A stretch of DNA of 64,000 nucleotides, taken from positions 62,001 to 126,000 of IMG/VR virus record IMGVR_UViG_3300005826_000294. One strand, given 5' to 3'. The translations under genes were made by a program, and so were the position numbers. Below, one piece after another: positions 3,796 through 49,300 of the stretch (its first letter is position 1; every line of letters starts with the position of its first letter). A model generated the notes under the pieces. The model searched no databases and was not told the DNA's origin. It saw only the letters and a list, made by a program, of their open reading frames with translations.

Positions 3796-3797
3796 AA

Positions 3798-13795: not shown

Positions 13796-13811
13796 TTATT
13801 ACTCCTTAATA

Positions 13812-14639: not shown

Positions 14640-14645
14640 TGCGAT

Positions 14646-15575: not shown

Positions 15576-15585
15576 TTAATTTTCC

Positions 15586-16562: not shown

Positions 16563-16637
16563 AAAAACCCTCCAAAAAACATAACTTTTTACACTATTAA
16601 TAAAAAAATAATAATATATATATTAGGAGAATATTCT

Positions 16638-17198: not shown

Positions 17199-17216
17199 AC
17201 TTTAAAAGGATCACAT

Positions 17217-21878: not shown

Positions 21879-21890
21879 TTTTATATTTCC

Positions 21891-22628: not shown

Positions 22629-22629
22629 A

Positions 22630-25931: not shown

Positions 25932-25958
25932 TTTATATTCCTTATAATTTATTATATA

Positions 25959-26714: not shown

Positions 26715-26716
26715 TT

Positions 26717-29014: not shown

Positions 29015-29847
29015 AATTTTCCAGATATAGATAATTTCATTAATTCAAAATAAGGGTCATATATTATTTTTTTATCACTTTGAGTATGTTTCCATCCAGT
29101 TGGATAATAAGAATTTTCTAATATTCGAAACTCATGGTAATGATAACAAATAAGATTATATTTATCATTTACTATTAATTTATTATTTTCTTTTGTAATT
29201 TTATATTTGGCAATATTCCATGGTCCCATATTTATACCAGGATGTGGACAAGAAAGATGATTTTGAAATTTATTAGGAGTATCATATAAAATATTTAAAT
29301 ATCCCTGATCTGCACACATTCCATTTGGTAATGTTTCCCATTTACACCATTCTAAACATCGTTCTTTCCACCATAAAAGAAATTCTTTACAATAATTATC
29401 ATTTCGATATCCTAATATCCCAACATTAAATCTAACACCAGATCTTGGTGGTTCAAATCCATGGTCTACAACCATCAAAGAGTAATCCCCCATAACTTGT
29501 TCTATTTCATTTGGATCAGACCAAAAAGCAATGTCGGCATCAGTATAATATAATGTATTTATATAGCTAAAATTATTAAAGATATATAAAGGTAATATTG
29601 GAGATATAGTTGCATAATATTCTTTTAATAATCTTGTATGTTTAATAGTAACAAGTTCTGGAAATTGATTTTCTAAATCTTTTAATTTAATTAGTATTAC
29701 ATTATTTAATTTAGAAGAAATATTATAAACATTATCATCTAAACATAATATAAATAATATACTATTTTTATCTTGTTTATGAAGAGTATAATTACAAACC
29801 AAACCTTTATTAAAATAATTAGAATCAAAATATGTACAAAAATACAT
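29011..29847 (-). CDS. GT-A glycosyltransferase (GT8-like), paralog of 40872-41735
   Basis: CTYFDSNY, LCLD, YYTDADIAF, FNVG, WWKERCLEWC, DQGYLN, LICYHY. Confidence 0.75.
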   Translation of the reverse strand: MYFCTYFDSNYFNKGLVCNYTLHKQDKNSILFILCLDDNVYNISSKLNNVILIKLKDLENQFPELVTIKHTRLLKEYYATISPILPLYIFNNFSYINTLYYTDADIAFWSDPNEIEQVMGDYSLMVVDHGFEPPRSGVRFNVGILGYRNDNYCKEFLLWWKERCLEWCKWETLPNGMCADQGYLNILYDTPNKFQNHLSCPHPGINMGPWNIAKYKITKENNKLIVNDKYNLICYHYHEFRILENSYYPTGWKHTQSDKKIIYDPYFELMKLSISGKL

Positions 29848-31358: not shown

Positions 31359-31366
31359 TAGTTAAA

Positions 31367-33604
31367 TTACTCCCTATTTTTAAATAATAAATTATATAAA
31401 TGATTAATATTGAAATTATTTGCTTTTTCTCTTGCCGCACGAGATACTGTTCGACAATTAAAAGAACATTTTTCTAATAATTTCCTATTGTTCTTGAATT
31501 TTTGAATTTCTCGAATAAATAAAGCAGGATTGTTTGAATTCCAAACCAAACTACCAGTAATTCCATCAAATACTATCTCCGAAATGGCTCCTACATCTGA
31601 AGCAATAACTGGAACTCCAGCCATCATTGCTTCCAAAATAACAAGAGGCATTCCCTCCATGGTTGAAGGAAGAATTAATAAATCAAAAGTAGCATAAAAC
31701 TCTTCAACATTGTCTTTTGATCCAATAAAACACACATTGTTTAATTGCTTCGCCATTTGTTCTAAAGGTTTTCTTTGAGGCCCGTCTCCAACAATTACAA
31801 AAGAAGCATCTGGAATTACTTTAGCACAATATAATATAATAGGAATATTCTTTTCAGGAGATAATCTTCCAACAAAACCTATAGTAAAATTTTCATTTAA
31901 TTTTTTCTCAACATTAAATCTTTCCCAATCAATTTGTTGAGGAAGAACAGCAACATTCTTATTACCATCTTTTAATAACTTTCTCCCCATCTTATTTGAA
32001 ACAGCCGTTATTAATGTAACATGTTCTCCGCGAGATGAAACTTTATTCATAGAATCATTCCAACTTAATTCGCTATGAACTGTTTCTACAATTCTACGCC
32101 TAAAACCTTGCTTCCATGCTTCTTGAATAACTCTATATACTCCAAAACTATTATAAAAATGAATTATACTATAATTTTCAGCTTCAATAAGGCATTTTAA
32201 TGCTTTATCTCTTCCCGAAGATGATAAATCCTCTATAATAACTCCCATATCTTTCAAAGATTGTTTAAACTTTTCTTCAGTTCCAGATATTAAAGCTACA
32301 TGAGGTTCATAAATTGATTTATTTAATTGAGAAATTGCTTGCTTAATCCATATCTCACCACCACCAACCATTTTATATGGAATAATATATAAAACTTTTC
32401 TTTTTATAGAAAGTTTTTTTGGAATAGGAAGATCTAAAATCATTTGAGCAGCATTTTCCCAAGAGAATTTTTTAACAATCTCTCTGGCTGGATTTTTAAT
32501 CCTCTTCAACTCCTTATCAAGATTTTTATAAGAATGATATAATAATTCTTTAAAATTTTCAATACTAGGATCTCCTACAACAGCACCTTTCATAACTCCC
32601 CAATACTGCATAGAATTTGGAGCTTCCATTTCTCCTGTATCAACCAATAAAGAATTATCATCATTTAAGAAATCTAATTGTCCTCCGTGTCTTGGAGCTA
32701 TAACCAATTTTTCGCAAGCTAAGGCCTCAAGAAGAGGTAAGCAAAAACCTTCCGTAGCACTCATACTAATAACTACATCACAAGCAGTATATAATGCTCC
32801 CATACTTGGAATAAATGTATTTACAACTTCAATCTCAGGAGGATTTTTCTTTCCTTTAAGATTATTTTCAATAATGGATTTTACATCAACTTCAAAAGGC
32901 TTAGTTTTATCAGGAGTTATAAATTGGGTTTTTAAAACTAAACAAACATCATCTTTGCTTGTGAATGTCTCAATATAACCTTTGATTACCCTTTCATGGA
33001 GTTTTCTATGGTGAGGAATAGCATTATGAAGGAATTTTACTTTTTTGTTTGTTTTTAATTTAAAAGGAGTAATATTGGGATTGAAAATAGTTTGATCAAC
33101 ACCATGAGGGACAATTAACATCTTATTTTTAGGAACACCATTATTAGCAAAAATATCATATGAAAATTGGCTTGAAGGAAGAATATAATCTATTGCCCTG
33201 CTATAATACTGCCATCCAGGAGGTAATACCGAACTCTCAAAGTTCCATATGGCCGCTTTACATTTGGACTCAGGAAAGAAACGCCTTGGATATTGATAAA
33301 ATATTGTATATGCTAATTCTAAATCATAAGGTCTGTTTTTGTCTTCAATTTCGGGTTTAGGTTGTTCTTTTGTAACAATAATCTCATTACCTTGCCCATC
33401 AACATATTCCGTGGGACCTTGAACCAAATGCCCATGATAACCAGAAAGTAAAATATCTTTTAAATCTTCAGGAAAATATTCTAATCCATTTGTGGATTTA
33501 AAATATATTTCATGTTCGGTTTTCTTCATTGCTCTGGCCAATGCTTGAGCTGTATAACTCCACGAATGGTTAGTTGCTCCCATTGTATGCCATCTTACTT
33601 TCAT
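31367..33604 (-). CDS. tandem two-domain GT4 glycosyltransferase
   Basis: First domain EGFCLPLLEALAC; second FVGRLSPEKN...EGMPLVILEAMMAGVPVIASDVG. Confidence 0.92.
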   Translation of the reverse strand: MKVRWHTMGATNHSWSYTAQALARAMKKTEHEIYFKSTNGLEYFPEDLKDILLSGYHGHLVQGPTEYVDGQGNEIIVTKEQPKPEIEDKNRPYDLELAYTIFYQYPRRFFPESKCKAAIWNFESSVLPPGWQYYSRAIDYILPSSQFSYDIFANNGVPKNKMLIVPHGVDQTIFNPNITPFKLKTNKKVKFLHNAIPHHRKLHERVIKGYIETFTSKDDVCLVLKTQFITPDKTKPFEVDVKSIIENNLKGKKNPPEIEVVNTFIPSMGALYTACDVVISMSATEGFCLPLLEALACEKLVIAPRHGGQLDFLNDDNSLLVDTGEMEAPNSMQYWGVMKGAVVGDPSIENFKELLYHSYKNLDKELKRIKNPAREIVKKFSWENAAQMILDLPIPKKLSIKRKVLYIIPYKMVGGGEIWIKQAISQLNKSIYEPHVALISGTEEKFKQSLKDMGVIIEDLSSSGRDKALKCLIEAENYSIIHFYNSFGVYRVIQEAWKQGFRRRIVETVHSELSWNDSMNKVSSRGEHVTLITAVSNKMGRKLLKDGNKNVAVLPQQIDWERFNVEKKLNENFTIGFVGRLSPEKNIPIILYCAKVIPDASFVIVGDGPQRKPLEQMAKQLNNVCFIGSKDNVEEFYATFDLLILPSTMEGMPLVILEAMMAGVPVIASDVGAISEIVFDGITGSLVWNSNNPALFIREIQKFKNNRKLLEKCSFNCRTVSRAAREKANNFNINHLYNLLFKNRE

Positions 33605-34765: not shown

Positions 34766-37732
34766 TCAACTTTTTATCCACTCATCTATCCAGCCGTGGC
34801 AATCAACACGATACTCTGAAAATGCAGCTTCTCGGAAATAATCTACTTGTTTTGTAGTTGTTGGAGTCGCAATTAATCCCCTACTATGAGCTGCTTCTCC
34901 ACCAGCATTTCCACCTAACCGAAATGTAGATGTATTCCAAAGAGTTGTTCCACTTGAAGAATCACCTTCTCCATTAACAAAAAAGTAAGAAGTGCTTGCA
35001 GAATTAACCTGAATATAGGCTTGTAAAATAGCATATGAAGCGGTCGCTGGAATATGATCAACAAGTGATAAAGTCTGTATTGATACATCTGCTGAGCCAC
35101 CCCCTGTAAATCCTCCAGTAGGTTGGCTTTGTGTAGCATAACTAAATTGTTGCCCACTTTGGAATACTTTTGCCAGATTACCACTACCATCAATATAATC
35201 CGCCCATAAATACTCAAAATTAGAATATCCAGCCGGACCAGTAGAAGGTGGATTATCACTGGCTCTAATGCTCAATATATTATCATCCCCACTAGATGGT
35301 ACAGCATACCAATATAGCCATTTGCTGTTTCCTTGAGATCCAGCTTCATCATATCCAAGATCTGCAATTCCTGTTGCAACTGCCCAATTAAGGGTTCCTA
35401 TAACTGTTCGTTGTTTCCCATCCTGTAGAGTTAATTTAACAGTAGAAGGTTGCCCTGAATATGCCAAAAAATCCACGGTAGTTACTGTTTGCCATATTCC
35501 CTTAAATGGTTTTGTATCTGGCAAGTATGGTGCTTGGGCTCGCGCCTCGTTGGCTCCCGGATACAGGGCGTTTCGATACCCGGCAAGTTGGATGGTCCAG
35601 GTCGATGAAACCGACTGGCCGAACTGCACCGCCAGTTCGCGTGCAGGGCACGCCATCCTTCTGGCGGCGCTGTAAGAACTATTCGTCGCAAATCGCTGAG
35701 TGTAGGGTTGTGCTGATGCTGCGGTCCAACTCGGTGCGGCTTCCGCAGCCAGCCACAACTGCTGATTGGTGGAAGAAACAATTCCGTGGACGTCTATCTC
35801 ATCAGCACTTTCTGGCATCAAAGCCCGCAGAGCGGTGGTCTTGTCCACCCAGGAACCGACCGTCCCAGGAACCGCCGAATCCCCAGAGTCGAGTGTGTAG
35901 GCCGTTAGATCTTTGGCCAGCGGCTCGTACCACCCACCCTCGGTCATCAGGAACTCTTCAAGCACCACAGGTCCCGTAGAAGTCACCCGCACCGTCCACA
36001 GGTAGCGGTATACGGAGAAGCTCGGTGGCCCCGAGGTTCCCGGCACCGCATCTTTGGACAGCACAAGCTTAGCCCTCGTGACGTCGGTGTCGCTCTCGAC
36101 CGCGAATAGGTGATAGAGGTCCCCCGCCGATTCGGCCGTGGCATCACCCGTGTCACGGCCACCAATGCCGTCCGTGTCGATGTCACACGTCAGAGGCAGG
36201 CTCGCTTTGCGCCGGACGCCATCGTTGAACAGGAGCCGCATCTCGGAGTCAGCACCGATGGCGGCGGTAGCGTTGATGAGCGATGTATCAGAGCTGTCTC
36301 GTGCAAAGACGGGTGTGTTTTCGGGATGGACGTAGCCACCGCGAATTTGACGTATCGCCGAACGAGACGTAAAGGACAATCCACCAAATGTGGTCGCCCC
36401 AAAGACCGTGCCAGATCCAGCGTCGTGGTATTCACCGAGATCTATCGTATTCGAGCCAGAACTGAGATCTAACTCTACTACGCCAGACAGTGGCGTCCAG
36501 TAGCCGGATACAGCTGACGCACCTTCCAGGGGGACCCAGCTTCCGGAATTTACACGATAAGCCAATGTGCGTGTCGCTGTGGAAGAACTAGAAATGATCA
36601 CAGAATACGTTAGGGCGAGTCTTTCCCCTTCGATAATGGTGACCGTGTGAGATAGACCAGTAATGATATTCCATGCTGAGGCAGACAACCCGGTTTGATC
36701 GCTTGATAGAGCTGCCGATGAAACCTCTACCCCCCCGGCAACACCATTGAACTCTACGTTCGCGGTGCCTCCAACGTTGGTCACCGAGACGTTGGGACCC
36801 ACGTAGTTGACCGCTGCGGGCTTGTCGATGATGTTGACGCCATCATGGCGTATGGGGACCAGGCCGCCTCTATTTTGATCAACGTCAATCCAAGATCCGG
36901 CCTTGATGCTCCAGCTCTGCGAAGTGAAGGTCGCTGCATACAGCTCTAGCGTGTGCGAGCCCGCGTCGACCTGCACAGAGAAACTGTCATTAAGAGGACC
37001 TTGATAAGTAGTATTCGGGAGCACCTCTGATAAAACGTTCCCAATCAAGGTGCCATCAAGACGAAGCTGCAGGTATACAGTGTTAGCACCTGTTCCACTT
37101 GCCCCCTGAACATGCAGTCCAACCCGGACAGTCTCGTCCTGGGTCGACTCAAACGTCACGCTCATCGGCTCCGTGGGGACGGGCGACAGTGATGTGGCCG
37201 TGATTGTCCGGTCAGCGCTCTGGATGAACTTGTTTGGTGCTAGGTTTCCACCTGCACCAGAACCACTAACAGCAACAAGCTCTAACCGAGGAGCCTGAAC
37301 CGGATTCGACGACGACCCAAGAACCTGGAGACCCGTCCCATTTATCTCTTTTGCGTAGGCCGTGACCGTGTGTGTCCCCGCAGATAGTTCAACCTCTCCA
37401 AACCATACGCTGGAGTCAAAGTTTGTTATCACACGGATTTGCCATTCGTCATCGTAACCTACCACTATAGGAGTTCCAGCTTCATCAAAAACTAATTTGA
37501 TTTGTCCAGTAGTGGCCGACACGGCATTGAATTGGCAACCGAACATGATCCGGTATAGACCAGAGAACGGAACCTCAAAGCTCATGCTGGCTTCGTCTTC
37601 CGGCATGATCTTGGTGTCCGTGGCTCCTATGGATATCGTGTTTACGGGCTGGCCGTCGCTGATTGCAATTCGGATCCCTGGAGCAGTGATGATCGCGTCA
37701 GAAATCTGGTCTACTTTTATAGATCTACTCAT
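34766..37732 (-). CDS. multi-domain fibre/receptor-binding-like virion protein, mostly GC-rich
   Basis: 988 aa, Ser/Thr/Gly/Ala-rich; three similar beta-sandwich units and two copies of a second domain; lies at the end of the structural block. Confidence 0.6.
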   Translation of the reverse strand: MSRSIKVDQISDAIITAPGIRIAISDGQPVNTISIGATDTKIMPEDEASMSFEVPFSGLYRIMFGCQFNAVSATTGQIKLVFDEAGTPIVVGYDDEWQIRVITNFDSSVWFGEVELSAGTHTVTAYAKEINGTGLQVLGSSSNPVQAPRLELVAVSGSGAGGNLAPNKFIQSADRTITATSLSPVPTEPMSVTFESTQDETVRVGLHVQGASGTGANTVYLQLRLDGTLIGNVLSEVLPNTTYQGPLNDSFSVQVDAGSHTLELYAATFTSQSWSIKAGSWIDVDQNRGGLVPIRHDGVNIIDKPAAVNYVGPNVSVTNVGGTANVEFNGVAGGVEVSSAALSSDQTGLSASAWNIITGLSHTVTIIEGERLALTYSVIISSSSTATRTLAYRVNSGSWVPLEGASAVSGYWTPLSGVVELDLSSGSNTIDLGEYHDAGSGTVFGATTFGGLSFTSRSAIRQIRGGYVHPENTPVFARDSSDTSLINATAAIGADSEMRLLFNDGVRRKASLPLTCDIDTDGIGGRDTGDATAESAGDLYHLFAVESDTDVTRAKLVLSKDAVPGTSGPPSFSVYRYLWTVRVTSTGPVVLEEFLMTEGGWYEPLAKDLTAYTLDSGDSAVPGTVGSWVDKTTALRALMPESADEIDVHGIVSSTNQQLWLAAEAAPSWTAASAQPYTQRFATNSSYSAARRMACPARELAVQFGQSVSSTWTIQLAGYRNALYPGANEARAQAPYLPDTKPFKGIWQTVTTVDFLAYSGQPSTVKLTLQDGKQRTVIGTLNWAVATGIADLGYDEAGSQGNSKWLYWYAVPSSGDDNILSIRASDNPPSTGPAGYSNFEYLWADYIDGSGNLAKVFQSGQQFSYATQSQPTGGFTGGGSADVSIQTLSLVDHIPATASYAILQAYIQVNSASTSYFFVNGEGDSSSGTTLWNTSTFRLGGNAGGEAAHSRGLIATPTTTKQVDYFREAAFSEYRVDCHGWIDEWIKS

Positions 37733-37734
37733 TA

Positions 37735-39747
37735 TTAACTCCTATAAATTACTTCATAGTCATCTGCAGAACCAGATGCTAAAATATCTATTTCATTATT
37801 ACCACTATCATAATTATAATGATTATATGTTGAAGGTGTATTATTATATTTCATCTTTACTCCATTTCTAAAAACAATAATATCATATCCAGAAGGAGTA
37901 TCTGCGGTTCCAGATCCTCTTGGTGTAGCATTTAAAGCCTCAGAAACCGTTGCTCCTGGAGTTTCGACGCCGGTCGTAGAAAATTCTTCTTCATGTGGTG
38001 TCGAACCAGATCCTGATATTTCAGCCCATTTTATTCCTGTTGCTTCTGAACTATCTGCTGTTAGAACATATCCATCAGAATCTATTGGAAGTCTTGTATT
38101 ATCTGTATCATAAACCCAAAGATCACCTTTTGTTGTTAATGGAGAGGAGGTTCCACTTCCAGATACATAACCATCAAGAGTAATTTGAACAACATTTCCA
38201 TTATTATCTAAATAAAATAATTCTGTATCACCAGCATCATCTTTTGTATATAATAACCCACTATTTTCTAAAGTCGATGGATCATTAATTTCATTTAATG
38301 CTAAATATCCATCAATCTCTAAAGCATCTGTTCCATATCCATCTATAAAAACTGGTTCTCCATTAATAACCCATATTATATTTCCATTAATATATGATTC
38401 GTGAAGGGTTCCAGAACCACTACCTCCTCCGCCTGGTGGAGGTGTCCAAGAGCCATCGGCTCTCAAATAATTAGTCGTTCCCCCTCCAGATGCTGGAGCT
38501 AAACCTTTAAGAGAATCTGTAAAACTATTAAGAATTTCGGTTGCTTGAGAAGAAGTCAAATCAACTGGGTCTCCAGTCCCTGAACCAGAAACTCTACCTT
38601 TGATTGTTGATTGAGCCATATCTGTAAGTTTTGTATTATCAACGACACCAGTATTAATCGTAGGGCCTGGATATGTTCCTGTAAGATCTCCAGAAGCAGA
38701 CCCTATTGGATTTCTTGAATCACTTAATCTAGAATCATTTCCTTGACAAATTGTATTAGCAGAGGAACCATATGTTGGTGTTATAATAGCATCAATATTA
38801 TCTCCTATATTTGTAACACCATTAGAACCTGTAATTGAATCGGTTTGTCCAAATAAATATCCATCTAAACGATATGAAAGACCATAATCATCCATATAAA
38901 TAAGAGCAGAATGTCCTTCTATTTCTTTTGAATATAAAAGACCAGCATTTACTAATGGTAAAGGATCATAAATATCATTTAGAGTTAAATATCCATCAAT
39001 TTCTATAGCATTTTCTTCATTTGCGTCAATAAAAATTGGACCGGAATCCGCATTAATTATTCTTCCTTCGCCACTTCCTCCTTGGTCATATGCTTGATCA
39101 AGAGTGTTATTTAAGGGAATATCTATCCATTTAATACCTAATAATTCTGTACTATCTGCAGATAAAATTTGAGTATCTGTTCCAACGGGAATTCTAGAAG
39201 AAGTTGTTCCATATCCATAAAGATCACCTTTAGTTGTTAAAGGATCAATAACAGATATGTCTTCCCATTTAAATCCAATTGCTTGAGAACTATCAGCCAT
39301 TAAAATTTTGTAATTTGTTCCAATAGGAAGACGATCTTCAACAGTAGAAAACCCATATAAATCACCTTTAGTTGTAAGAGGAGAATCAATTGGTAAACTA
39401 CTAATAGTAATACGTTTTTTATTCCATGAATCAGTACTATCTTCAATTATAAACTCATCAGAAACTGCGGGAGAGCTTTTTAGAGTAATCTGATGAATTT
39501 CGTCAGAGACATTATCGTGTATAGCATCATTGTCTGTTCCAACAAGAGATTCTAAAACAGTTACTCTTTTCCTAACACTTCCAAGTTCTTCTAAATCTGA
39601 TCCTAAAACAGATTGAACTGAAAAAATAGCATCTCTAATTGAAAGTATTTGACTTATATGTGATACATCTTGCTTATTAACAAGGTTGGGCATTTCTGTA
39701 GTTGTATCTAAACTAGTTGGGAAATTACTTTTCCAAGTTTTTACCAT
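37735..39747 (-). CDS. fibre-like virion protein with internal repeats
   Basis: 3x PLTTKGDL...RLP...LxADS...GxKW; 2x TL..AY...IDGYL.LN.I.DP; context. Confidence 0.65.
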   Translation of the reverse strand: MVKTWKSNFPTSLDTTTEMPNLVNKQDVSHISQILSIRDAIFSVQSVLGSDLEELGSVRKRVTVLESLVGTDNDAIHDNVSDEIHQITLKSSPAVSDEFIIEDSTDSWNKKRITISSLPIDSPLTTKGDLYGFSTVEDRLPIGTNYKILMADSSQAIGFKWEDISVIDPLTTKGDLYGYGTTSSRIPVGTDTQILSADSTELLGIKWIDIPLNNTLDQAYDQGGSGEGRIINADSGPIFIDANEENAIEIDGYLTLNDIYDPLPLVNAGLLYSKEIEGHSALIYMDDYGLSYRLDGYLFGQTDSITGSNGVTNIGDNIDAIITPTYGSSANTICQGNDSRLSDSRNPIGSASGDLTGTYPGPTINTGVVDNTKLTDMAQSTIKGRVSGSGTGDPVDLTSSQATEILNSFTDSLKGLAPASGGGTTNYLRADGSWTPPPGGGGSGSGTLHESYINGNIIWVINGEPVFIDGYGTDALEIDGYLALNEINDPSTLENSGLLYTKDDAGDTELFYLDNNGNVVQITLDGYVSGSGTSSPLTTKGDLWVYDTDNTRLPIDSDGYVLTADSSEATGIKWAEISGSGSTPHEEEFSTTGVETPGATVSEALNATPRGSGTADTPSGYDIIVFRNGVKMKYNNTPSTYNHYNYDSGNNEIDILASGSADDYEVIYRS

Positions 39748-39793: not shown

Positions 39794-40900
39794 TTAAAGT
39801 ATATTTACTCTAAAACGTTTTATATATTGCCCACCTTCTTGATATATAATTCTTCCTTGAAATGAAACATCATTAGATCCTGAATCACCATCTTGATATA
39901 ACCCTGGATAACCATAAACACCATTTGATCCAGGAGTTCCAGCCGGTCCATTTGCTGCTGATTCATCACAACCACTAACACCTCCTGTTGATCCATCATA
40001 ACCATTCATACCGCCTCCACATCCAGCACCACCTAATCCTCCTGGTCCACCTATTCCATAAGAACCAGCAGAACCACCATCTGCATCTCCACCAATTCCT
40101 GGTTCTCCACTTGAATAAGATGATGAATTTATTGAAAACCATGAACTTGTTGGCCTAGAAGATTCAATAACTATATTTCCTCCATTTCCTCCATTCCTTC
40201 CAGCTCCACCAGTTCCTCCAGCTCCTCCACTTGTAGCACAGCCTCCTGATCCACCAGTTCCACCATTTCCACCATTATAAGAACCTAAATCACAATCAAT
40301 ACTACAAGCAGCATCACCTCCATTTCCTCCATTTCCTCCATTTCCTCCATTTCCTCCATTTCCTCCATTGGCATTCCCACCATTTCCACCATTACCACCA
40401 TCTGATTCTATATTTCCAAGTATAACTTCTACAGAAGATAAAGTAAGATCTCCTCCATTTCCAGCATATCCTCCACCTAAAGCAATTCCGCCATTTGTTG
40501 GATAACCACCAAATTCACCACCCCCACCACTTCCGCCATTTCCTCCACCACTACAAAAGACAGCATCAATCCCATTAGCTCCATTAGTTCCATTGGCCCC
40601 ATTAGTTCCATTAGTTCCATTAGAACTACTACCAGTTCCACCATTATATCCTTTTGTACTTATAGTATTTCCAACACTATATATTTTTCTAATAGCATTA
40701 ATTTCACAATCATTAGAATATCCATTAACATTAGCATGTATATATGCTTCAATACAATTTATAGAAAAATTACTTATAATCGTAGTAGCAGATGATATTG
40801 TAAATATCCCAACATTTATATGAACTCCACCTATATTTCCACCAGAAAAAGTCCAATCATCTCCTCCATGATCACCCCCACCAGTTGCAGTCCAAGTCAT
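39794..40900 (-). CDS. glycine-rich (GGN/GxN repeat) virion-associated protein
   Basis: GTNGTNGANGTNGANG, (GGN)n runs, scattered Cys. Confidence 0.6.
40321..40365. repeat. perfect 9-bp tandem repeat x5 (CATTTCCTC), encodes GGN
   Basis: Read directly. Confidence 0.95.
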
Positions 40901-41735
40901 TTAAAAAATCCTCCCTAAATAAACAATATTTTTTATAATATGAATCATATATGTATTTTGATACATTATCTCTAAACCTAACAGAAGCATCATAACCATT
41001 TTTATTAATTTTAAGACCTTGATAATGAAAACAAATTAATAAATCATTATCAACATATATCTTATCATTTTTTATTTTTAATTGATGTTTACACATATTC
41101 CAATATGCTAAATTGATACCATGATGTTTTGATATCAAAACACCTTTAAACTTTTCTGGTTGATCATAAAAAATATTAAAATATCCTTCTTCGGAAAACC
41201 TTCCCCCTTCTCCTGGTTTCCATAAACACCATTCAATGGTTTTCTTTTGCCACCATTTTAAAAATTTATTTCCCAATTTATCATTTTTGCAAGCATAAAA
41301 TCCACCATTATATCTTCCTTGTCTTGGAGGAGGTTCCCCAGATTCTCGTGATGTAACCATAAAAGAATAACTGCCAAGAATGTCATTTATTTGAGAACTT
41401 TTGTCCCAAAAATATAAATCCGAATCAACATAATAAACACAATTCTCATTATAAATGTCAAATATATAACTAGGAATAAAGACCTTACAAGTTTGAGTAT
41501 AAGCATTCCAAGGTCTTGTTAATCGAGCCTTAAATAAATCTGGATAATAGTTTTCTAAATCATATAATTGGATTGGTATTATATTATTTTTATATTTATA
41601 TGCTTCTTGAAAAACTCTTTGATCTAAACATAAAACATAAATTTTCATTGTTGGATCAAAATCTATTATTGATTTACAACATAACCAACCTTCTATTGAA
41701 AAATTACTATCAAATAACATACATGCCGAAATCAT
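40872..41735 (-). CDS. GT-A glycosyltransferase (GT8-like) among fibre genes, paralog of 29011-29847
   Basis: [45 protein letters not shown]. Confidence 0.75.
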
Positions 41736-43483
41736 TAGTTAAATACCGCATAAAGATCTGTATATTGTAGATATGCTGTATCTGTTCCTGTTGTAACTCT
41801 TAGATTAAACTCAACAACTAGAAGATTTCCAGGTGTTTCTGGAGGGTTTGAAACGGTAATTGTTTGTTGTAAAACTGTTTCTAATGTATTTGTTGTTGTA
41901 AAGGTTGTACTATCCCAAGTAGAAACGCCATCTCCAACTCTAACAATACATTCTGCAGTATCTCCATAACCACCTGAAACCCAAAGACTAACAACTACTA
42001 ACCACTCATCATTAACACGTCCAGTTGGAATTACAAGTCTAAATGTTTTTTTTGTTACTGAACTAGTTCCTGATTCAGCAAATGTTGTATCATCAGAGAA
42101 TACAAGGAAATGTCCTACTGATCCTCCACCACCACCAGATTGAGCTTGAGGTTCCCATTGATTATTATATGTGCTCCATACTAAGACATCACTATCATTT
42201 GGAGAAGAATTTTCTACAGCTCTTCCTTGAATCGCAATAACAGTAGGATCTGGATAAAAACCATCAAGATCACCACTTGCGGCCTCAGTAATTCCTGGTA
42301 TAGCATCTGGAACCCATTGAGAACCACTATTATTCCAAATTAAAACATCTCCATCATTTGGAGACGCAGAATCTACATTATTTCCTTGTAATCCTGTTAC
42401 AGTAATGTTTGTAAAAACTCCTGATACATCACCACCAGAAGAAGTCGTTGTAAATATAAAATCTGCTCCACTTACTTTGGAATTAATACTTGATGGTGTA
42501 TCAGCAATATGTTGGGCTCCGCCCATAGTGTGTGAAGCAACAGATGGAGTTGCAGGAGCCCATTGGGAACCTGTCCAAGATAAAACTTGTCCAGAACTAG
42601 GAGATGTTAAGGAAATGGCCCTTGTTTGAAGTTGTCCAGCATTTTGAGCATCTGCTAAAACTCCACTTAATCCTCCAACATTTATCTCATCAGCTCCACC
42701 ATTTTCATGAGTAGAAGCATGTGCTCCTGGAGCACCAGCAGGTGTTGGAGTCCATTTTGATCCATCATATGCTAAAACTTCTGATGCTGAAGGAGTCGCA
42801 GAATCTATATTTCTTCCTTGAATTTTAACAACAGTAGGATTTGGATATGTTCCATCTAAATCTCCATTAGCATCTGTTATTCCACTTATAATAACATTTA
42901 TTGGAGTCCATTGGGAACCTGTCCAAGATAAAACTTGATTAGATGCAGGAGATCCAGAAATACTATATCCTAATAATCCAACAACAGTAGGATTAGGTAA
43001 AGATCCATTAAGATCTCCTCCAACATTACCACTTCCTGTTGCTGAAATGACAGTAGCATATCCATCTTCTAATGCTCTTAAATTTGAATAAATTCCATCA
43101 CTCCAACCATTAAATTCATTTGTTTCATCTTTAGCAGTTAATCTCATATTAAGATAAGGACTTCTAACACAAACTCCAACTCTTCCTTTTAGTATTCGAT
43201 TTAATGTTAGTTCTACAATATAAGAACCATAAGCATCTGCGGTAAATGATGTTTTAATATCTCCAACAGATCCTGAGTCTACCTCTCTACTCCAAGACAC
43301 AAAACTTAAAGAAGCAGAAGATCCGGGAGGTTTAGAAACAATTCTCCAAGCATATCCATCTACATGAGTTTTATCTGTATTTTCAAACTCGACTAAACTA
43401 TTATATAGTATATCATCATTACTAATATTAGGTTCTCCACCATTTACGCTGATACTAATAATCGCATTTTGTCTATGCGCCAT
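41735..43483 (-). CDS. fibre-like virion protein with repeated modules
   Basis: About five GDL.G.YP.PTV..IQG / P...VL.W.GSQW.P modules. Confidence 0.65.
   Translation of the reverse strand: MAHRQNAIISISVNGGEPNISNDDILYNSLVEFENTDKTHVDGYAWRIVSKPPGSSASLSFVSWSREVDSGSVGDIKTSFTADAYGSYIVELTLNRILKGRVGVCVRSPYLNMRLTAKDETNEFNGWSDGIYSNLRALEDGYATVISATGSGNVGGDLNGSLPNPTVVGLLGYSISGSPASNQVLSWTGSQWTPINVIISGITDANGDLDGTYPNPTVVKIQGRNIDSATPSASEVLAYDGSKWTPTPAGAPGAHASTHENGGADEINVGGLSGVLADAQNAGQLQTRAISLTSPSSGQVLSWTGSQWAPATPSVASHTMGGAQHIADTPSSINSKVSGADFIFTTTSSGGDVSGVFTNITVTGLQGNNVDSASPNDGDVLIWNNSGSQWVPDAIPGITEAASGDLDGFYPDPTVIAIQGRAVENSSPNDSDVLVWSTYNNQWEPQAQSGGGGGSVGHFLVFSDDTTFAESGTSSVTKKTFRLVIPTGRVNDEWLVVVSLWVSGGYGDTAECIVRVGDGVSTWDSTTFTTTNTLETVLQQTITVSNPPETPGNLLVVEFNLRVTTGTDTAYLQYTDLYAVFN
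42560..42937. repeat. exact 30-bp direct repeat (42560-42589 and 42908-42937), encodes QVLSWTGSQW
   Basis: CCATTGGGAACCTGTCCAAGATAAAACTTG at both positions. Confidence 0.9.
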
Positions 43484-43494: not shown

Positions 43495-46341
43495 CTATAT
43501 TCCTAAAAGGGCTCTCATTTCGCCATCTGTTATATTTTGAGTTGGATTTCTAAAACCTGCTTTCTTTAAATAAACTTCAATAAGAATTTTGGTTCTAATT
43601 GCTGGTTCAGCAATTGCTTCATAACCATCAGTCATATAAAGTGTCATTAAAGAAATATCTGGATCATAATTCAAACCAACAATATCTGTAATATTACCGC
43701 TAAATGGAACGGAAACATTACTTGAAGTTGATTGAATTGAAGGAGCAATTTTAACTTTTCCATCATCAAAATCTGTTGCTTGAACATAAGAATTATCTGA
43801 GAATTTCATAGCATTAAAGCCAGAAGCAGTTTTCCCATTAGCCTCTTCTGCTACAAAAGTATCAAATAATAAAATTCCTGAATATCCATCAATCAATATT
43901 GGACTTCCATATGCATCTGTAATTGGAACATGTAATGATAAATGAGTCATCTCAAAATCAATTTTATAATCTGTTCCATCTGGGTTAAGTATTTCACCTT
44001 CTAATAACAAATCTCCAGGAATAAAATAATTATTCTGTCCACCATTACATCCATTTACAGGATCTGAAATTGTAGTAGCAAGCTTTCTTCTTGAATCACT
44101 TACAACTACTAAATCTGGGATCCATGTTGGAAAGTATTCTATCTTCCAATTAATACTTGAAAATGGAACATTAGCAAAAGAAGAACAAACACTAGGAATT
44201 TCGGCTTCAGCCTTTAATGAATCAGTTAAATTTTCCACAGTAAGCATTAGTCTAGGAAAAGTTGAACCAGCAGAAAAACTTGAAACTATTTTATCAACAA
44301 AATCTTCTATTAATCCCTCATCAACATTATTAATAATACCATTAGAATCTACATCTGATCTTAATAATGTTTCAATATCAACATATCCATCAATAATAAA
44401 CTGTTGAGTCATTGAATCTGAAAGATCAAGAATATTTGTACCTAATCCAACTCCAAGAATTTCTTCAGTATAATTAAGATAATCTTGTCTTATTTCTTGT
44501 AATGTTAAAAGATCTTCAATACTTATAGAGCCATCTCCATTTACATCTCCATAAGCATCATAAAATAACTCTGCCTTGGTAATACGATAGGTTTCACAAC
44601 AACTTGTTGAATTAGGAGTTAATAATGATCCTACCCAATTATGTTGTAATAAATCAGCATTAGGATAAAGTATATTAAACTCATTTCTTCTAGCCAATCC
44701 AATTATATTTGTTATTCCATTTACTTCGGCAATATTTGCCCTTGGGTTCCTATCTCTTGCACAACCTAATAATAAAGGTGTTGGGTTAGTTTCAAGTAAA
44801 GTATTTAATCTAGACAAACTAATAAGAGAAAAACTAGGAACAGGTTTTACTCTTGAAGAAATAAGATTTCCTGTTCTTTGATCTTGAGTTGGTTCAGAAT
44901 ATTCTAATTGTCTTTCCATAATTATATAGTTATATGCGTCTCTTGTTACTAAACTAAATTCATGAGGACCAGAAACATAAGGAACCTCAGTATTTGTTGA
45001 ATCTTTTTGTATTTTTGGAACTTCAATCCCAATTCCATCTTCATATGCTATTCCATCAGCTACTTTAATATAATCACCATAAACAATATACCACATATCA
45101 CTATCTTTTATATTAATCCATTGAGTTCCATCATAATAGATCATATATCCTGTGTCGCCACGTTGAGGAGCCTCTTCTATTATCAAATCTCCTACACTTG
45201 TGTCTCCAGATCTATGAATTGTAAAAGCATAATATTTATCAGGTGTTACTGGTGATCTTAAAGGATCTGAAATATTAGTATTTGTAAATACAAAATCTAC
45301 TATTTGAGAGTAACCATCTAATACAATACCTTGTTTTTCTAAATCTATTTTATCAAGAGAAAGTTGCCCAATAATTCTAGGATCTGGGTCAAAATCTTCT
45401 GAATTATCTGGTACAGGAGAAACTGGGCAATTTACCTCGGTTTGAAGTTCATAAACAGATAAAGTAACGGCTCCAGACCAATCATATCCATCAACTGAAT
45501 CATAGGCAGACGAAAGTAGAATAGATATTTTTTGAATATTATTACCATTGGACTGAAATTTTTGTCCAATTTTGGTTGTTACATCTAAAGCAGATAAAGT
45601 TCTTTGTTGAGACGATACTAAACCAATATCCAAATCAGCAATAGATTTTGCATCATCATCAGCTCTAATAGCAGTATCTAACATTGTAGTTACTGTTGTT
45701 GTCCAATTTGCTGGAATTAATTCAGCAAAAAACTTATTTGGTTGGGAAGTTTGATATGCTAATATTGTATCACGAGATGCTTCAAGAGAATCAACTTCAA
45801 CAATTAAGCAACGTCCTACAAGATTACCAGAAACAATAGCATTTGATCTACTTCCACGAAGATTCCCAGCAAAATCACCAAAAATTATAGAACGTATTTT
45901 TTTATATCTTCCACGAGTTAATTGAGTTCCATTCTCATTAAAAATAAGATCATCATGTACTAATTCATCACCAAATGTGTCTCCTATAATAGAAACTTTT
46001 GATTGGGATTTTCCTTCTAAAACCACATCAGATAAGGTTATAGAAAGTTGAACTCCTTTAATAACATCACTTACGACATCATCATTATCATATATATTTT
46101 GTCCATCAAAAGAATAAGCATCAAGTAATGCTTGTTGTTCTGAACTAAGATTATTAGTATCAAGTATAACATTCTTTATAGTTGTATTTACAGTAATACC
46201 ACTGCTAAAAAAGTTATGAATGTTGGAAGCATCAATATCTTTATGTCTAGTTTGTTCATCAACCATATCATCTTTATCTACCTGCATTCCATCAAACCAA
46301 TTAACTCGGGATATTCCTACCGGTAATTTTTTGGTAATCAT
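43495..46341 (-). CDS. virion structural protein with a dockerin-like duplicated Ca-binding motif
   Basis: N-terminal RVNWFDGMQV; GDVNGDGSISIEDLL and SDVDSNGIINNVD; context. Confidence 0.6.
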   Translation of the reverse strand: MITKKLPVGISRVNWFDGMQVDKDDMVDEQTRHKDIDASNIHNFFSSGITVNTTIKNVILDTNNLSSEQQALLDAYSFDGQNIYDNDDVVSDVIKGVQLSITLSDVVLEGKSQSKVSIIGDTFGDELVHDDLIFNENGTQLTRGRYKKIRSIIFGDFAGNLRGSRSNAIVSGNLVGRCLIVEVDSLEASRDTILAYQTSQPNKFFAELIPANWTTTVTTMLDTAIRADDDAKSIADLDIGLVSSQQRTLSALDVTTKIGQKFQSNGNNIQKISILLSSAYDSVDGYDWSGAVTLSVYELQTEVNCPVSPVPDNSEDFDPDPRIIGQLSLDKIDLEKQGIVLDGYSQIVDFVFTNTNISDPLRSPVTPDKYYAFTIHRSGDTSVGDLIIEEAPQRGDTGYMIYYDGTQWINIKDSDMWYIVYGDYIKVADGIAYEDGIGIEVPKIQKDSTNTEVPYVSGPHEFSLVTRDAYNYIIMERQLEYSEPTQDQRTGNLISSRVKPVPSFSLISLSRLNTLLETNPTPLLLGCARDRNPRANIAEVNGITNIIGLARRNEFNILYPNADLLQHNWVGSLLTPNSTSCCETYRITKAELFYDAYGDVNGDGSISIEDLLTLQEIRQDYLNYTEEILGVGLGTNILDLSDSMTQQFIIDGYVDIETLLRSDVDSNGIINNVDEGLIEDFVDKIVSSFSAGSTFPRLMLTVENLTDSLKAEAEIPSVCSSFANVPFSSINWKIEYFPTWIPDLVVVSDSRRKLATTISDPVNGCNGGQNNYFIPGDLLLEGEILNPDGTDYKIDFEMTHLSLHVPITDAYGSPILIDGYSGILLFDTFVAEEANGKTASGFNAMKFSDNSYVQATDFDDGKVKIAPSIQSTSSNVSVPFSGNITDIVGLNYDPDISLMTLYMTDGYEAIAEPAIRTKILIEVYLKKAGFRNPTQNITDGEMRALLGI

Positions 46342-46352
46342 TTATTATTCTC

Positions 46353-49300
46353 CTACTTAGTAAAGCTTACAAAAGCTCTAGTATGCGATGGTTTTATTCT
46401 ATTTATTAAATCCTCAATTAATTGATGTGCTAAATCTGTATCAACTAATTCAAATGTGTCTATTACTTCTACAAAGAAATCAAAAATACCTGTTGTTGCG
46501 TCTCTAATTTGTATCAAATACTCTACTTCATTTTGTTCTGTATTAAAATCCAATAATAATCCTGTTATAGCATCATCAATCACTGGTAGAGCAGCATTAA
46601 TATTGCTCGTATATAATAAATCTTTACCAATGAGTTTTCCAGGTCCAAGACCAACAACAATATCCGTTTCAGTAGCTCCAAGATATGTAATTGGTCTTAA
46701 AGCTGAAGAAAATCTTATATTATCCATTCTAGCAAGGGCCGAATATTGTTCAGTAAAATCCGCTCCTATATTTATAATATTAAATGTATCTAAGAGATTA
46801 ATATCAGCAAGAATATTTCTAGAAATAGTTGTTCCAACATCTGCCGATCCCCAAACAGTTTTCATTCCGTATGTAATACCAGTTCCATATATTAAACCAG
46901 TCCCATATCTTACTATACCACCCTCAGTTCCATCTACTATAAAAATAAGTCGATCTTGTCCGTCGCTATTATTAAGATCCCAACCAGCAAATACACGATG
47001 CCAAGTATTTTTCTTCCAATAAATAGGCGTTGAAATTTGATAATCAACACCAGATGCTGTCACCGAAAATACTAAATTACCAATTTCATTTTTAAAAATG
47101 CTAAAACGATCACCTTGTGTTGCTATTGGAACATATGTAATATTAACTTCCAAAATATCTACGGGTAATTGTTGTCCTAAACGGACATTTATTCCATCAT
47201 TTGCTAAACTTCCACCAATAAAATAATTTGTTGTATCTCCTGGAATTGTTATAGATGTTACAGCCCTAGCTCTTTTAGGTAATCTAATAGAAAGAGATGT
47301 AATTACCTGAGCAGTAGAAGAAATTTCGGAAGATAAATCAATATAATATCTTTTACTTGGATCATTATATGTATCTAATATGGGACTTACCCAAAATTCA
47401 ACCGTTCCTTCGTTATTCTTAAATACAGCATTATTATCAATTTGTAATGATTTTTTCATATTAAAAATAGCAGATTGACCAAAATTTGTATTTACGCTGT
47501 TTTCACTTTGTTTATAATTTCCAGAAAAACTGGTTATAAAATTAGCAGAGTTTTCTATATCTTCATTAAAATGAAATAATGCTAATGTTTGATTTGTTGT
47601 TTCAAACTCACGAACAGCAATAGCATCTGTTGATATACTTCTTCCAGAACTTGGTAAAATTTCTCCAGTATGAGTGTCTAAAGACATTTCATCTAAAATT
47701 CTCATCTCATCAATAACAGCATTAGCTTGATTTTCTCCAAATATATCGGAACCAATATATATATTATTAGGTATTTCATTCCAAGGAATAATTAAATATG
47801 CTGGAAAATCAACCTCATACCAACAACTCCTTAATAAGAATGGTTGTCCTCCAGTTCTTGCTGTTTCTAAAGTAATTAACCCATTAGCAAAACCACTATT
47901 TCCATACGAAGTATTTAACATTCTCCAAGATATTGTATTATATCCATCTGGAAATGTAGAATCTAAAACAACGCTATTAGAATCTTTTGCCGTTCCTGAT
48001 GGATCTAATGGAACATCTATAATAGTATATGTATTAGAAATTGCAGATGTTGTTACTCCATAAGCATCTTTTGCTGATATAATATTAATTATTTTATTAA
48101 TATCTTCTTCACCAAATCTTGAATAAATATCTGTAAGATTTGGTGATCCAGAAGTCACATATCCATCACTTCCAACTTGTTCTATGGAAGATAAATGAAT
48201 ATCAGCATAGAGACCACTATTTTCTGGCCAGTTAATAGGAAAAGTTTCTCTAATTTCAATAGCTCCTGCTGATAATGATGAATCAATTGGCGAGAAAGAA
48301 ACATTAATATCTGTAAGGGATGTAAAAAACTTTGTTGTAGATTGTTTTCCTGGTCCGCTAAAAGTAATAATTTCAACATTAGTTCCATCATAAGTGGTTC
48401 CAACAATTACAACCTGATTAAATCCAAACCAATCAATATTATTACCAGAAACAGTTATGGTTAAACTTCTTCCAGTATCAGTATTTGATGGTTGGCAAAA
48501 ATCAAGACTAGAGGTTAATATAGTAACGAGATGACCGCCAACCAATGTAGCAATCAAAGCAAAAGAACCAGGTTCAATCATTGTTCTTTTTATTATCATA
48601 TTAACAATATTTATTTTAGAAATAGCAGTTGGAGCAGGCATTATTGTATTTAATAAGTTTGTTTTTAAATCAGGCCATACATATACAAATTGAGAACACC
48701 TACCAAGAGTTAATCCATATGTTTTTATTGAAATTGGGCTACCAGTAGATACACCATTATAAATATTAACAAAATCCATATATCCATCTTTATTTAAACT
48801 ATAATCTGGTGTTAATGTATTTGGAGAATTTAATTCAATTTCTGTTCCATAAGAATCTTCAACAAATATTCTTATTTTTTCTATTTCGACATCACTAACT
48901 GTTTGAAGTTCAAGTGGGTTTATTGTATATCTAATATTTTCTAATGTAGCATTTGCGGTCCATAAAACTCCAGATCCTGGAAGACCTAAACTATCTCCGA
49001 CCTCTATTTCAAGAAAATTTTGCCCTACAGTTTTTACATATGCGAATGGGAAACTCTGAGTGCTTAGACCATCTGTCGTATCATCAAGAATTTCAAATCT
49101 ATTTCCAATAGAAACACCATTTCCAGAAAAATTTGAGCTCAATGATACAACTTGCGAAGATCCTTGGGTTGTTTGGAGATCGAACCCTCCAATGGTAGGA
49201 GAAGTGGCAGAAATTACCAAAATCTCTTTCGCTTCATCCAAAAATTTTGAGCCATTAGGAACAGTTATAGGGTTTTTAAACCTATAAGTATTTTTATTAA

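What the first reader, a model, noticed from the sequence alone, without database searches (positions are those of the whole stretch)
40872..41735. A glycosyltransferase wedged between two fibre-like genes
Seen: a paralog of 29011-29847 lies about 6 kb outside the glycan operon, overlapping or abutting both structural neighbours (shares 41735; overlaps 40872-40900). Inference: co-expressed with its substrate; the best candidate for a fibre-specific or initiating transferase and independent support for virion proteins as acceptors.
Basis: partly seen in the sequence, partly recalled or inferred. Interest (0 to 1): 0.62.

Follow-up and report, generated by a model that had tools for sequence, protein, structure and literature searches.

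The report
Sugar-adding enzyme inside a tail-fibre cassette
A large uncultured phage carries a divergent sugar-transferring enzyme between its tail-fibre tip gene and a glycine-rich partner gene; the same three genes travel together in unrelated phages, so the enzyme probably modifies the fibre tip, though no target has been shown.

Summary
ORF 40872-41735 (-) encodes 287 aa. It shares one base with the stop of the upstream 582-aa fibre gene, overlaps the downstream 368-aa Gly-rich gene by 29 nt, and is 37% identical (E 5e-59) to 29011-29847 in the glycan operon.

No Pfam, PHROG, NCBIfam or PDB sequence match exists. The AF2 model (pLDDT 92) aligns over its full length with GT8/GT24 retaining glycosyltransferases (Z about 19: glycogenin, UGGT, LARGE1, LgtC). 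DxD, NxG and a late His are invariant, so the enzyme does not look dead.

The gene order [fibre ending in a conserved ~130-aa lectin-like beta-sandwich] -> [this GT] -> [Gly-rich protein] recurs in about 12 distinct loci. Several of these phages share nothing else with this one.

The same slot can hold a GT-GNAT fusion, a GNAT alone, or nothing, so it behaves as an accessory modification-enzyme slot.

Fibre-linked copies form their own clade. In them the family's DQ catalytic-centre dipeptide is replaced by EE, and they are acidic, whereas their mostly basic wider relatives include members of cellular polysaccharide clusters.

The acceptor is not shown.

Verdict: a real, probably active, fibre-cassette-specific glycosyltransferase.

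The parts
40872..41735 (-). The finding: a 287-aa soluble GT-A glycosyltransferase, GT8-like, of the fibre-linked clade. Motifs: D9, D38, K84, D104-x-D106, N143-G-G145, E182-E183-G-Y, H237.
   Evidence: ORF. AF2 model pLDDT 92. VIA Z 19.4 to UGGT GT24, 19.3 to glycogenin, 17.7 to LgtC, about 240 residues aligned. Invariant motifs.
41735..43483 (-). 582-aa tail-fibre-like protein. It has five ~40-aa repeats (GDL.G.YP.PTV..LQGR ... W.P) followed by a conserved C-terminal domain.
   Evidence: Translation. PHROG 9729 tail fiber E 2e-9 and PHROG 9627 E 1e-11. 53-61% identical orthologues in L001 and L004.
41738..42163 (-). C-terminal ~130-140-aa beta-sandwich domain of the fibre protein (aa 441-582). 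It is the one part conserved in every cassette and ends in YTD[IL]YA.
   Evidence: HMM hits E 1e-43 to 1e-59 in all loci. AF2 pLDDT 87.5, nine strands. Foldseek matches to CBM16/CBM4, TNF-like lectins (BC2L-C N-domain, PLTL) and the lambda gpJ tip, TM about 0.5, E about 1e-4.
39794..40900 (-). 368-aa glycine-rich protein (31% Gly, 11% Asn) with a conserved N-terminus ([16 protein letters not shown]) and C-terminus ([20 protein letters not shown]). It is the constant partner of the fibre domain.
   Evidence: ESM Atlas leads only: PGRS-like structure TM 0.46-0.60, GP38 cluster score 0.77.
29011..29847 (-). Operon paralogue, 278 aa, which keeps the family-typical DQGYLN, TDAD and NVGI motifs.
1354..33604 (-). 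Glycan biosynthesis cluster of soluble enzymes: RmlA/RmlB-like, FdtA, DegT, GDP-mannose dehydratase, epimerases, HAD-NTP transferase, methyltransferase, and glycosyltransferases of GT2, GT4 and GT47 types. No membrane proteins.
   Evidence: Pfam. Hydropathy scan.
43495..53264 (-). Upstream structural genes in the same tightly packed gene string: a 948-aa and a 2303-aa protein, following the baseplate wedge genes at 53267-56963.
34766..39747 (-). Genes that separate the cassette from the operon in this genome: a 670-aa fibre-like protein (37735-39747) and a 988-aa ORF of 51% GC (34766-37732).

Best explanation
The gene encodes an active, soluble, metal-dependent, retaining-type GT-A glycosyltransferase. 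It belongs to a large, mostly unannotated family on the edge of CAZy GT8.

It is the optional middle gene of a portable three-gene tail-fibre-tip cassette. The first gene is a fibre protein ending in a lectin-like beta-sandwich. The last is a glycine-rich partner protein.

The gene is read in one string with these late structural genes (shown: overlapping stop/start codons and no intergenic space).

The most likely mechanism (inferred) is that it takes a nucleotide sugar in the cytoplasm and puts a sugar on a product of its own cassette. That product would be the fibre tip domain or the Gly-rich partner, modified before or during fibre assembly. The result would be a change in the surface of the receptor-binding end of the fibre.

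The remodelled catalytic centre (DQ to EE, loss of two family-typical His) and the acidic charge suggest one thing (inferred). After duplication from a glycan-chain-building ancestor, it would have switched from a membrane-proximal sugar acceptor to a soluble one.
For: Enzyme identity:
- Full-length GT8/GT24 fold, Z about 19.
- A broadened family profile hits the GT8 enzyme GlyE (5gvv) at E 0.0014, aligning D..Y, DxD, NxG and DQ.
- Family members score above the Pfam GT8 cut-off in the homologous region.
- DxD is present in 190 of 194 family domains, and H237 is invariant.

Cassette:
- The order fibre-CTD -> GT -> Gly-rich is seen in WIN, L001, L002, L004, L005, L006, L010/11, L014 and L028. 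CTD -> GT is seen in L007, L009 and L019.
- L002, L005, L006, L009 and L012 share only cassette genes with the window.
- In L005 and L006 the cassette directly follows Baseplate_J.
- The 26-29-nt overlap with the Gly-rich gene is conserved.

Accessory-enzyme slot: it holds a GT-GNAT fusion in L006, a homologous GNAT alone in L027, and nothing in L008 and L025.

Clade-specific change:
- The fibre-linked label maps to one side of a 100/100 branch.
- EE is found only in this clade, 23 domains against 156 with DQ.
- pI is mostly 4.8-6.6, against a family median of 8.8.

No export route: no TM proteins in the glycan cluster, and no Bac_transf, WecA-type, Wzx, Wzy or ABC-2 genes in the 301.7-kb record.

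Precedent: mycobacteriophage virion glycosylation by transferases encoded beside structural genes (Freeman et al. 2023, as cited in PMC12619734).
Against: - No acceptor is shown.
- Complex prediction for GT plus fibre CTD gave no verdict.
- Three cassettes lack the GT, so it is not needed for the fibre/Gly-rich pair as such.
- No Ser/Thr/Tyr column in the CTD or the Gly-rich N-terminus tracks presence of the GT.
- GT8 enzymes are classically LPS-core and glycan transferases, and the nearest cellular relatives sit in polysaccharide clusters.
- The fold match cannot distinguish protein acceptors from sugar acceptors.
- The genome record is estimated to be only 75% complete.
- No expression data could be obtained.
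Confidence: 0.45

Rival explanations
1. Receptor-modifying enzyme linked to the receptor-binding protein. The GT alters the host surface glycan (LPS/LOS core, capsule or O-unit, built at the inner face of the membrane) that the lectin-like fibre tip recognises. This would block superinfection or the loss of progeny on debris. It travels with the tip domain so that fibre specificity and modification stay matched.
For: GT8 relatives in cellular polysaccharide clusters. The fibre CTD resembles carbohydrate-binding modules and lectins. The GT is dispensable in three cassettes. From my own knowledge: P22 gtrABC lies beside the tailspike gene, and T5 llp lies beside the receptor-binding gene.
Against: The gene is embedded with overlapping codons inside a late structural gene string, not set apart as a separately expressed moron. 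The fibre clade is acidic, unlike its basic, presumably membrane-proximal relatives. There are no TM segments and no Gtr-type partners. There is no tyrosine integrase in the record. A GNAT in the same slot fits surface-glycan modification poorly.
Confidence: 0.2
2. An ordinary chain-extending member of the phage glycan pathway. It adds one sugar to the glycan built by the neighbouring operon, whatever that glycan's final carrier. Its place in the fibre cassette is only the module boundary.
For: It is a paralogue of operon genes. In relatives the cassette abuts the first operon gene (L007, L010/L011). The family ancestry is glycan-building.
Against: The cassette, including the GT, occurs in phages with no detectable glycan operon within 8-10 kb (L002, L005, L006). 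The fibre-linked clade is old and separate (100/100) and has a changed catalytic centre.
Confidence: 0.15
3. A non-catalytic or moonlighting assembly factor. It sits in the position that tail-fibre assembly chaperones hold in P2-type phages and helps the fibre tip fold or recruits the Gly-rich protein.
For: It lies immediately downstream of the fibre gene, directly after Baseplate_J -> fibre in L005 and L006.
Against: The donor and metal motifs are invariant across the clade. There is no similarity to Tfa or gp38 families. It is absent from three cassettes.
Confidence: 0.05
4. It glycosylates something else: DNA bases, a small molecule, or another virion protein outside the cassette (capsid, sheath, or the DGY-rich 948-aa and 2303-aa proteins).
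For: Phage GTs that modify DNA are common (reviewed in PMC12619734). DGY is strongly enriched in structural proteins here.
Against: DGY enrichment persists in L003, which lacks this GT, and is absent around the GT in L002, L005 and L006. Cassette linkage is unexplained by a DNA or small-molecule target.
Confidence: 0.1

Closest known systems
CAZy GT8 retaining glycosyltransferases (glycogenin, LgtC, LARGE1 xylosyltransferase domain, GlyE) and the GT24 UGGT catalytic domain
   Same: Same GT-A fold over about 240 of 287 residues (Z 17.5-19.4). N-terminal D..Y, DxD, NxG and late His motifs in the same order. A profile hit to GlyE at E 0.0014 aligns these motifs.
   Different: 7-14% identity. The protein itself has no Pfam PF01501 hit even at E 10. 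The DQ dipeptide at the catalytic centre is EE in this clade. It is acidic and has no membrane-binding basic tail. Donor and acceptor are unknown.
Mycobacteriophage virion glycosylation (Freeman et al. 2023, Cell Host Microbe; cited in PMC12619734)
   Same: Phage-encoded transferases lie beside structural genes, and the idea is cytoplasmic glycosylation of virion proteins.
   Different: There the acceptors are the C-termini of capsid and tail-tube subunits, and glycosylation was shown by mass spectrometry. Here the link is to a fibre-tip cassette, the enzyme family is different, and nothing has been shown biochemically.
Giant-virus fibril glycosylation clusters (Mimivirus and relatives) and their GT8-like enzymes
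   Same: A virus-encoded, all-soluble sugar-nucleotide plus transferase cluster lies next to fibre genes. The nearest viral fold matches are GT8-like proteins of Klosneuvirus, Tetraselmis virus 1 and Hyperionvirus, plus marine cyanophage GTs.
   Different: At most 16% identity. This is a bacterial virus with a contractile-tail baseplate. The cassette arrangement is not described for those viruses (my own knowledge).
Tail-fibre distal modules with a downstream helper or adhesin (P2 H/G, Mu S/U, T2/S16 gp37-gp38)
   Same: A gene directly downstream of the fibre gene co-varies with the fibre tip. The Gly-rich third gene recalls the glycine-rich gp38 adhesin (weak Atlas lead).
   Different: The middle gene is an enzyme, not a chaperone family member. 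There are no Pfam or PHROG hits to Tfa or GP38.
Seroconverting phage Gtr systems and other receptor-modifying genes next to tailspike genes
   Same: A sugar-modifying gene is genetically linked to the receptor-binding protein.
   Different: Gtr systems need a flippase, a bactoprenol GT and a membrane GT-C, and are expressed from prophages. None of these features is present here.

Membership tests
GT-A fold, GT8-like clan (retaining nucleotide-sugar transferases) | Single Rossmann-like GT-A domain that superposes on solved GT8/GT24 enzymes over most of its length | tested here: met
   AF2 pLDDT 92, pTM 0.91. VIA Z 19.4 to UGGT, 19.3 to glycogenin, 18.1 to LARGE1, 17.7 to LgtC, with 233-256 residues aligned at rmsd 3.3-4.0. 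Foldseek E about 1e-9.
GT-A fold, GT8-like clan (retaining nucleotide-sugar transferases) | DxD motif that binds the divalent cation and the diphosphate | tested here: met
   D104-S-D106 is invariant in A1 and A3. D.D is present in 190 of 194 family domains. It aligns to LDSD of GlyE.
GT-A fold, GT8-like clan (retaining nucleotide-sugar transferases) | C-terminal His completing the metal site (LgtC H244 and glycogenin H212, from my own knowledge) | tested here: inconclusive
   H237 is invariant in 58 sequences and lies in the structurally aligned range. No residue-level superposition was available, and the HMM alignment to GlyE stops at position 200.
GT-A fold, GT8-like clan (retaining nucleotide-sugar transferases) | DQ dipeptide (D188-Q189 in LgtC) at the donor-sugar face | tested here: not met
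   The family consensus is DQ (156 of 194 domains), aligned to DQ of GlyE. This protein and all 23 fibre-clade domains have EE.
Pfam PF01501 Glyco_transf_8 (sequence family) | Score above the gathering cut-off (24.3 bits) | tested here: not met
   No hit at E <= 10 for this protein or its paralogue, and none in the genome. The link is only transitive: family members P0020, P0021, P0023 and P0038 score 35-56 bits, and P0074 carries a precomputed GT8 hit.
Glycosyltransferase (enzyme activity) | Transfer of sugar from an NDP-sugar to an acceptor | not testable with these tools
   Needs an enzyme assay.
Phage virion-protein glycosylation system | Transferase gene embedded among virion structural genes, in conserved synteny | tested here: met
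Phage virion-protein glycosylation system | Glycan demonstrated on a virion protein | not testable with these tools
   Needs mass spectrometry or glycan staining. The co-fold test gave no verdict.
Tail-fibre assembly chaperone / gp38-type helper | Homology to Tfa, Caudo_TAP or GP38 families | tested here: not met
   No Pfam, PHROG or NCBIfam hit. The fold is an enzyme fold. Only the gene position matches.
Seroconversion (Gtr-type) glycosylation module | Membrane GT with flippase and bactoprenol-GT partners, in a temperate phage | tested here: not met
   No TM segments in the GT or the cluster. No Wzx, Wzy, Bac_transf, WecA-type or ABC-2 genes. No tyrosine integrase.

The most novel reading that the evidence does not exclude
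Tail-fibre tips of diverse uncultured phages come as a mobile cassette that carries its own post-translational modification enzyme: a GT8-derived transferase with an EE catalytic centre, sometimes fused to or replaced by a GNAT. This enzyme would directly glycosylate (or acetylate) the receptor-binding tip or its glycine-rich adhesin partner. It would be a programmable, horizontally exchanged way to tune or mask the business end of the fibre, and a new protein-directed branch of the GT8 clan.
Probability: 0.35. Interest if true: 0.75.

Novelty: new variant of a known kind. Interest (0 to 1): 0.6.

Why it matters
Virion glycosylation in phages is so far established mainly for capsid and tail-tube proteins of mycobacteriophages. 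A modification enzyme hard-wired into a portable fibre-tip cassette would extend this to the receptor-binding apparatus, where a sugar coat could change host range, protect against proteases or antibodies, or mimic host glycans.

The case is directly testable. It needs three small soluble proteins, a clear catalytic knockout (D104/D106), and natural controls: cassettes without the enzyme, or with a GNAT instead.

The analysis also defines a large family on the GT8 margin that is unnamed in the members looked up. It has 7,420 clusters at 50% identity with E <= 1e-3, and many members escape Pfam. One clade within it has changed the catalytic-centre dipeptide.

Tried and rejected
Searches with no result:
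- Direct family scans of the protein (Pfam at E <= 10, PHROGs, NCBIfam) and PDB sequence searches with the single protein and the 19-sequence profile gave nothing useful.
- tblastn against 50,697 GenBank phages gave no match.

Tests with no verdict or no answer:
- Complex prediction of GT (alignment A1) with the fibre C-terminal domain (A2) scored ipSAE 0.00 in both runs, so controls were not run. This is no verdict and is not evidence either way.
No expression or co-transcription data were obtained, and read laying was not used.
- The promoter/terminator consensus scan of 33-47 kb found no more promoter-like sites than shuffles. Terminator-like sites (13 against 6.3 expected) all lie inside ORFs, so it is uninformative.

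Ideas tested and rejected:
- DGY as an acceptor motif for this enzyme. The enrichment is real: 21 copies in five structural proteins against about 1.2 expected. But it is conserved in L003, which lacks this GT, and is absent from the GT's neighbours in L002, L005 and L006. It is therefore a property of the 948-aa and 2303-aa protein families.
- A search for a Ser/Thr/Tyr column in the fibre CTD or the Gly-rich N-terminus that tracks presence of the GT found none.
- A search for GT remnants in GT-less cassettes found none, but turned up the GNAT ORF in L027.
- Membership in the 'moraphage' lineage (PMC12619734). No HSP70 gene is in the record, and that paper's figure legend appears to say heat-shock genes occur in all moraphages, so the lineage is left open.

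Full report
WHAT IS THERE

The window is part of a 301.7-kb IMG/VR virus record (312.6-kb contig). GC is 22-33% and almost all genes lie on the minus strand. Baseplate wedge genes (gp6/J-like at 53267-56503, gp25-like at 56505-56963) show a contractile-tailed jumbo phage. There is no close relative among 50,697 GenBank phages.

Downstream of the baseplate genes the gene string runs as follows, with gaps of 46 nt or less:
- a 2303-aa protein
- a 948-aa protein
- a 582-aa fibre protein
- the 287-aa ORF of the finding
- a 368-aa glycine-rich protein
- a 670-aa fibre-like protein
- a 988-aa ORF

After a LAGLIDADG endonuclease comes a cluster of more than 30 kb of soluble sugar-nucleotide and transferase genes, reaching from about 1.3 to 33.6 kb.

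THE OBSERVATION

All stated details hold.
- The sequence TAATG at 41737-41733 joins the fibre gene's stop to the ORF's start.
- The ORF's last 29 nt overlap the start of the Gly-rich gene.
- The ORF is 37% identical (E 5e-59) to 29011-29847, the only other copy in the record.

IS IT A GLYCOSYLTRANSFERASE?

Not by any direct family scan. The evidence comes from other sources.

- Homologues. Nineteen unnamed metagenomic homologues gave an alignment with invariant D38, D104-x-D106, N143-G-G145, W161-W162 and H237.
- Fold. The AlphaFold2 model has pLDDT 92. It matches GT8 and GT24 retaining transferases over its whole length. Foldseek E is about 1e-9 to LARGE1, AgtA, LgtC and glycogenin. VIA Z is 19.4 to UGGT, 19.3 to glycogenin and 17.7 to LgtC, with about 240 residues aligned. 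Viral fold neighbours are GT8-like proteins of giant viruses and marine phages.
- Family size. An exhaustive profile search shows a large family: 7,420 clusters at E <= 1e-3 and 1,119 at E <= 1e-30.
- Links to GT8. Some members pass the Pfam GT8 cut-off in the homologous region. Two members that I looked up sit in cellular polysaccharide clusters. A 58-sequence profile hits the GT8 enzyme GlyE (5gvv) at E 0.0014, aligning the D..Y, DxD, NxG and DQ motifs.

The protein is therefore a divergent GT8-clan enzyme with intact donor and metal motifs. It does not look catalytically dead.

A CLADE WITH A CHANGED CENTRE

In a tree of 29 family members, the copies lying in glycan operons form a 100/100 clade. 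The fibre-linked label needs only one change on the tree.

Fibre-linked copies differ from the operon copies and from the wider family at several conserved positions:
- TQTCK against ATISP
- VDSD against TDAD
- SRE against xHR
- NGGF against NVG
- FHYQG against YHFHG

Most notably, they have EE where 156 of 194 family domains have the DQ of GT8. All 23 EE domains belong to this clade.

They are also acidic (pI mostly 4.8-6.6), whereas single-domain family members have a median pI of 8.8. I read this, as inference, as a shift away from a membrane-proximal sugar acceptor.

THE CASSETTE

Contexts came from eleven contig look-ups and two scans of IMG/VR. HMMs were built here for the fibre's last ~130 aa and for the Gly-rich N-terminus. 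The results were as follows.

- fibre-CTD -> GT -> Gly-rich: WIN, L001, L002, L004, L005, L006, L010/L011, L014 and L028. By gene sizes, the P0004 and P0009 contigs also fit.
- CTD -> GT without the Gly-rich gene: L007 and L009. L019 is cut off after the GT.
- GT -> Gly-rich following a different 1309-aa protein: L012.
- CTD -> Gly-rich with no GT: L008 and L025.
- None of the three genes: L003.

The rest of the fibre protein varies freely, while the C-terminal domain is constant. Loci L002, L005, L006, L009 and L012 share only cassette genes with this window. In L005 and L006 the cassette follows tape measure ... Baseplate_J directly. That puts the GT in the place where P2-type phages carry the fibre assembly gene.

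The fibre C-terminal domain models as a nine-strand beta-sandwich (pLDDT 87.5). It resembles carbohydrate-binding modules, TNF-like lectins and the lambda gpJ tip (TM about 0.5). The Gly-rich protein has only weak leads to PGRS-like and gp38-like proteins.

A SLOT FOR MODIFYING ENZYMES

In L006 the GT carries a C-terminal GNAT acetyltransferase domain (Pfam Acetyltransf_7, 31 bits against a cut-off of 27). In L027 the slot holds a stand-alone 140-aa ORF instead of the GT. That ORF is homologous to this domain over its whole length (E 2e-16). Radical SAM genes flank the cassette in L006 and L012.

The slot between the fibre gene and the Gly-rich gene thus holds accessory modification enzymes. 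It does not hold an essential assembly factor.

WHAT IT MOST LIKELY DOES

Shown:
- A probably active soluble GT8-like enzyme.
- Translational coupling with late structural genes.
- Deep and portable synteny with the fibre tip and the Gly-rich partner.
- A clade-specific catalytic centre.
- No membrane or export components in the cluster or in the record.
- No tyrosine integrase.

Inferred: the enzyme glycosylates a product of its own cassette in the cytoplasm. I put this at about 0.45.

Rivals:
- Modification of the host glycan receptor that the lectin-like tip reads (0.2).
- Ordinary chain extension in the operon's pathway (0.15). The cassette abuts the operon in L007 and L010/L011, but it also exists without any operon nearby in L002, L005 and L006.
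- Another target, such as DNA or other virion proteins (0.1).
- A non-catalytic helper (0.05).

WHAT DID NOT WORK

- The co-fold test of GT with the fibre domain gave no verdict.
- No acceptor-like residue tracks presence of the GT.
It follows the 948-aa and 2303-aa families even where this GT is absent (L003), and it is missing around the GT in other phages.

COMPARISON AND NOVELTY

It works like a GT8 enzyme, but it fails the Pfam sequence test and the DQ test, so I file it as GT8-like and not as a GT8 member.

The nearest biological precedent is virion glycosylation in mycobacteriophages (cited in PMC12619734). By my own knowledge, a further precedent is fibril glycosylation in giant viruses.

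I found no description of a transferase, or a GNAT, built into a mobile fibre-tip cassette. I rate it a new variant of a known kind, interest 0.6.

Noticed in passing
L006:9992-11287; L027:4412-4834: The slot between the fibre-CTD gene and the Gly-rich gene holds a GT fused to a C-terminal GNAT acetyltransferase domain in L006. In L027 it holds a stand-alone GNAT-like ORF homologous to that domain (E 2e-16) instead of the GT.
   Followed up: partly
L006:11984-13129; L012:2710-3339; window 15846-16562: Radical SAM enzymes lie next to the fibre cassette in two distant phages. A radical SAM/SPASM gene also sits in the window's glycan cluster. This may be a further modification activity.
   Followed up: no
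window 34766-37732: A 988-aa ORF has 51% GC in a genome of 22-33% GC and has no Pfam or PHROG hit. It looks like a recent foreign insertion between the fibre genes and the glycan operon.
   Followed up: no
window 10689-12878 and 9383-10699: The GDP-mannose 4,6-dehydratase gene is interrupted by an intein (Pfam Intein_splicing between the two dehydratase halves). The next ORF is an HNH endonuclease.
   Followed up: no
window 33601-34500: A LAGLIDADG homing endonuclease with an N-terminal HTH overlaps the start of the double GT4 gene by 4 nt. It sits at the boundary between the structural module and the glycan operon.
   Followed up: no
window 37735-39747, 41735-53264, 58600-60609 and orthologues in L001, L003, L004, L007, L010, L014: The tripeptide DGY is enriched about 15-fold in five structural proteins (21 copies against about 1.2 expected). 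Only one copy occurs in the non-structural ORFs. Several sites are conserved in position as [VIL][VIL]DGY. The cause is unknown, and the motif is not tied to the GT of this finding.
   Followed up: partly
whole record G000 (301,683 b): The large glycan gene set has no lipid-carrier priming transferase, flippase, polymerase/ligase or ABC-2 permease, and no TM proteins in the window's cluster. The glycan is probably built on a soluble acceptor or relies on host membrane steps. The record is estimated to be 75% complete.
   Followed up: partly
G000:C1:36427-36849: IMG/VR labels the record 'provirus', but there is no tyrosine integrase. The only recombinase match is a small resolvase/invertase-type serine recombinase (209-aa frame), about 25 kb before the window.
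   Followed up: no
window 16524-17918: Two plus-strand ORFs (224 and 233 aa, no family hits) form the only plus-strand island in the window, and GC skew flips there.
   Followed up: no
L007:9950-10921: The fibre-linked GT is 323 aa and ends in about 25 residues that resemble the C-terminus of the Gly-rich protein (E 3e-4). No separate Gly-rich gene follows. This may be a deletion that fused the two genes.
   Followed up: no
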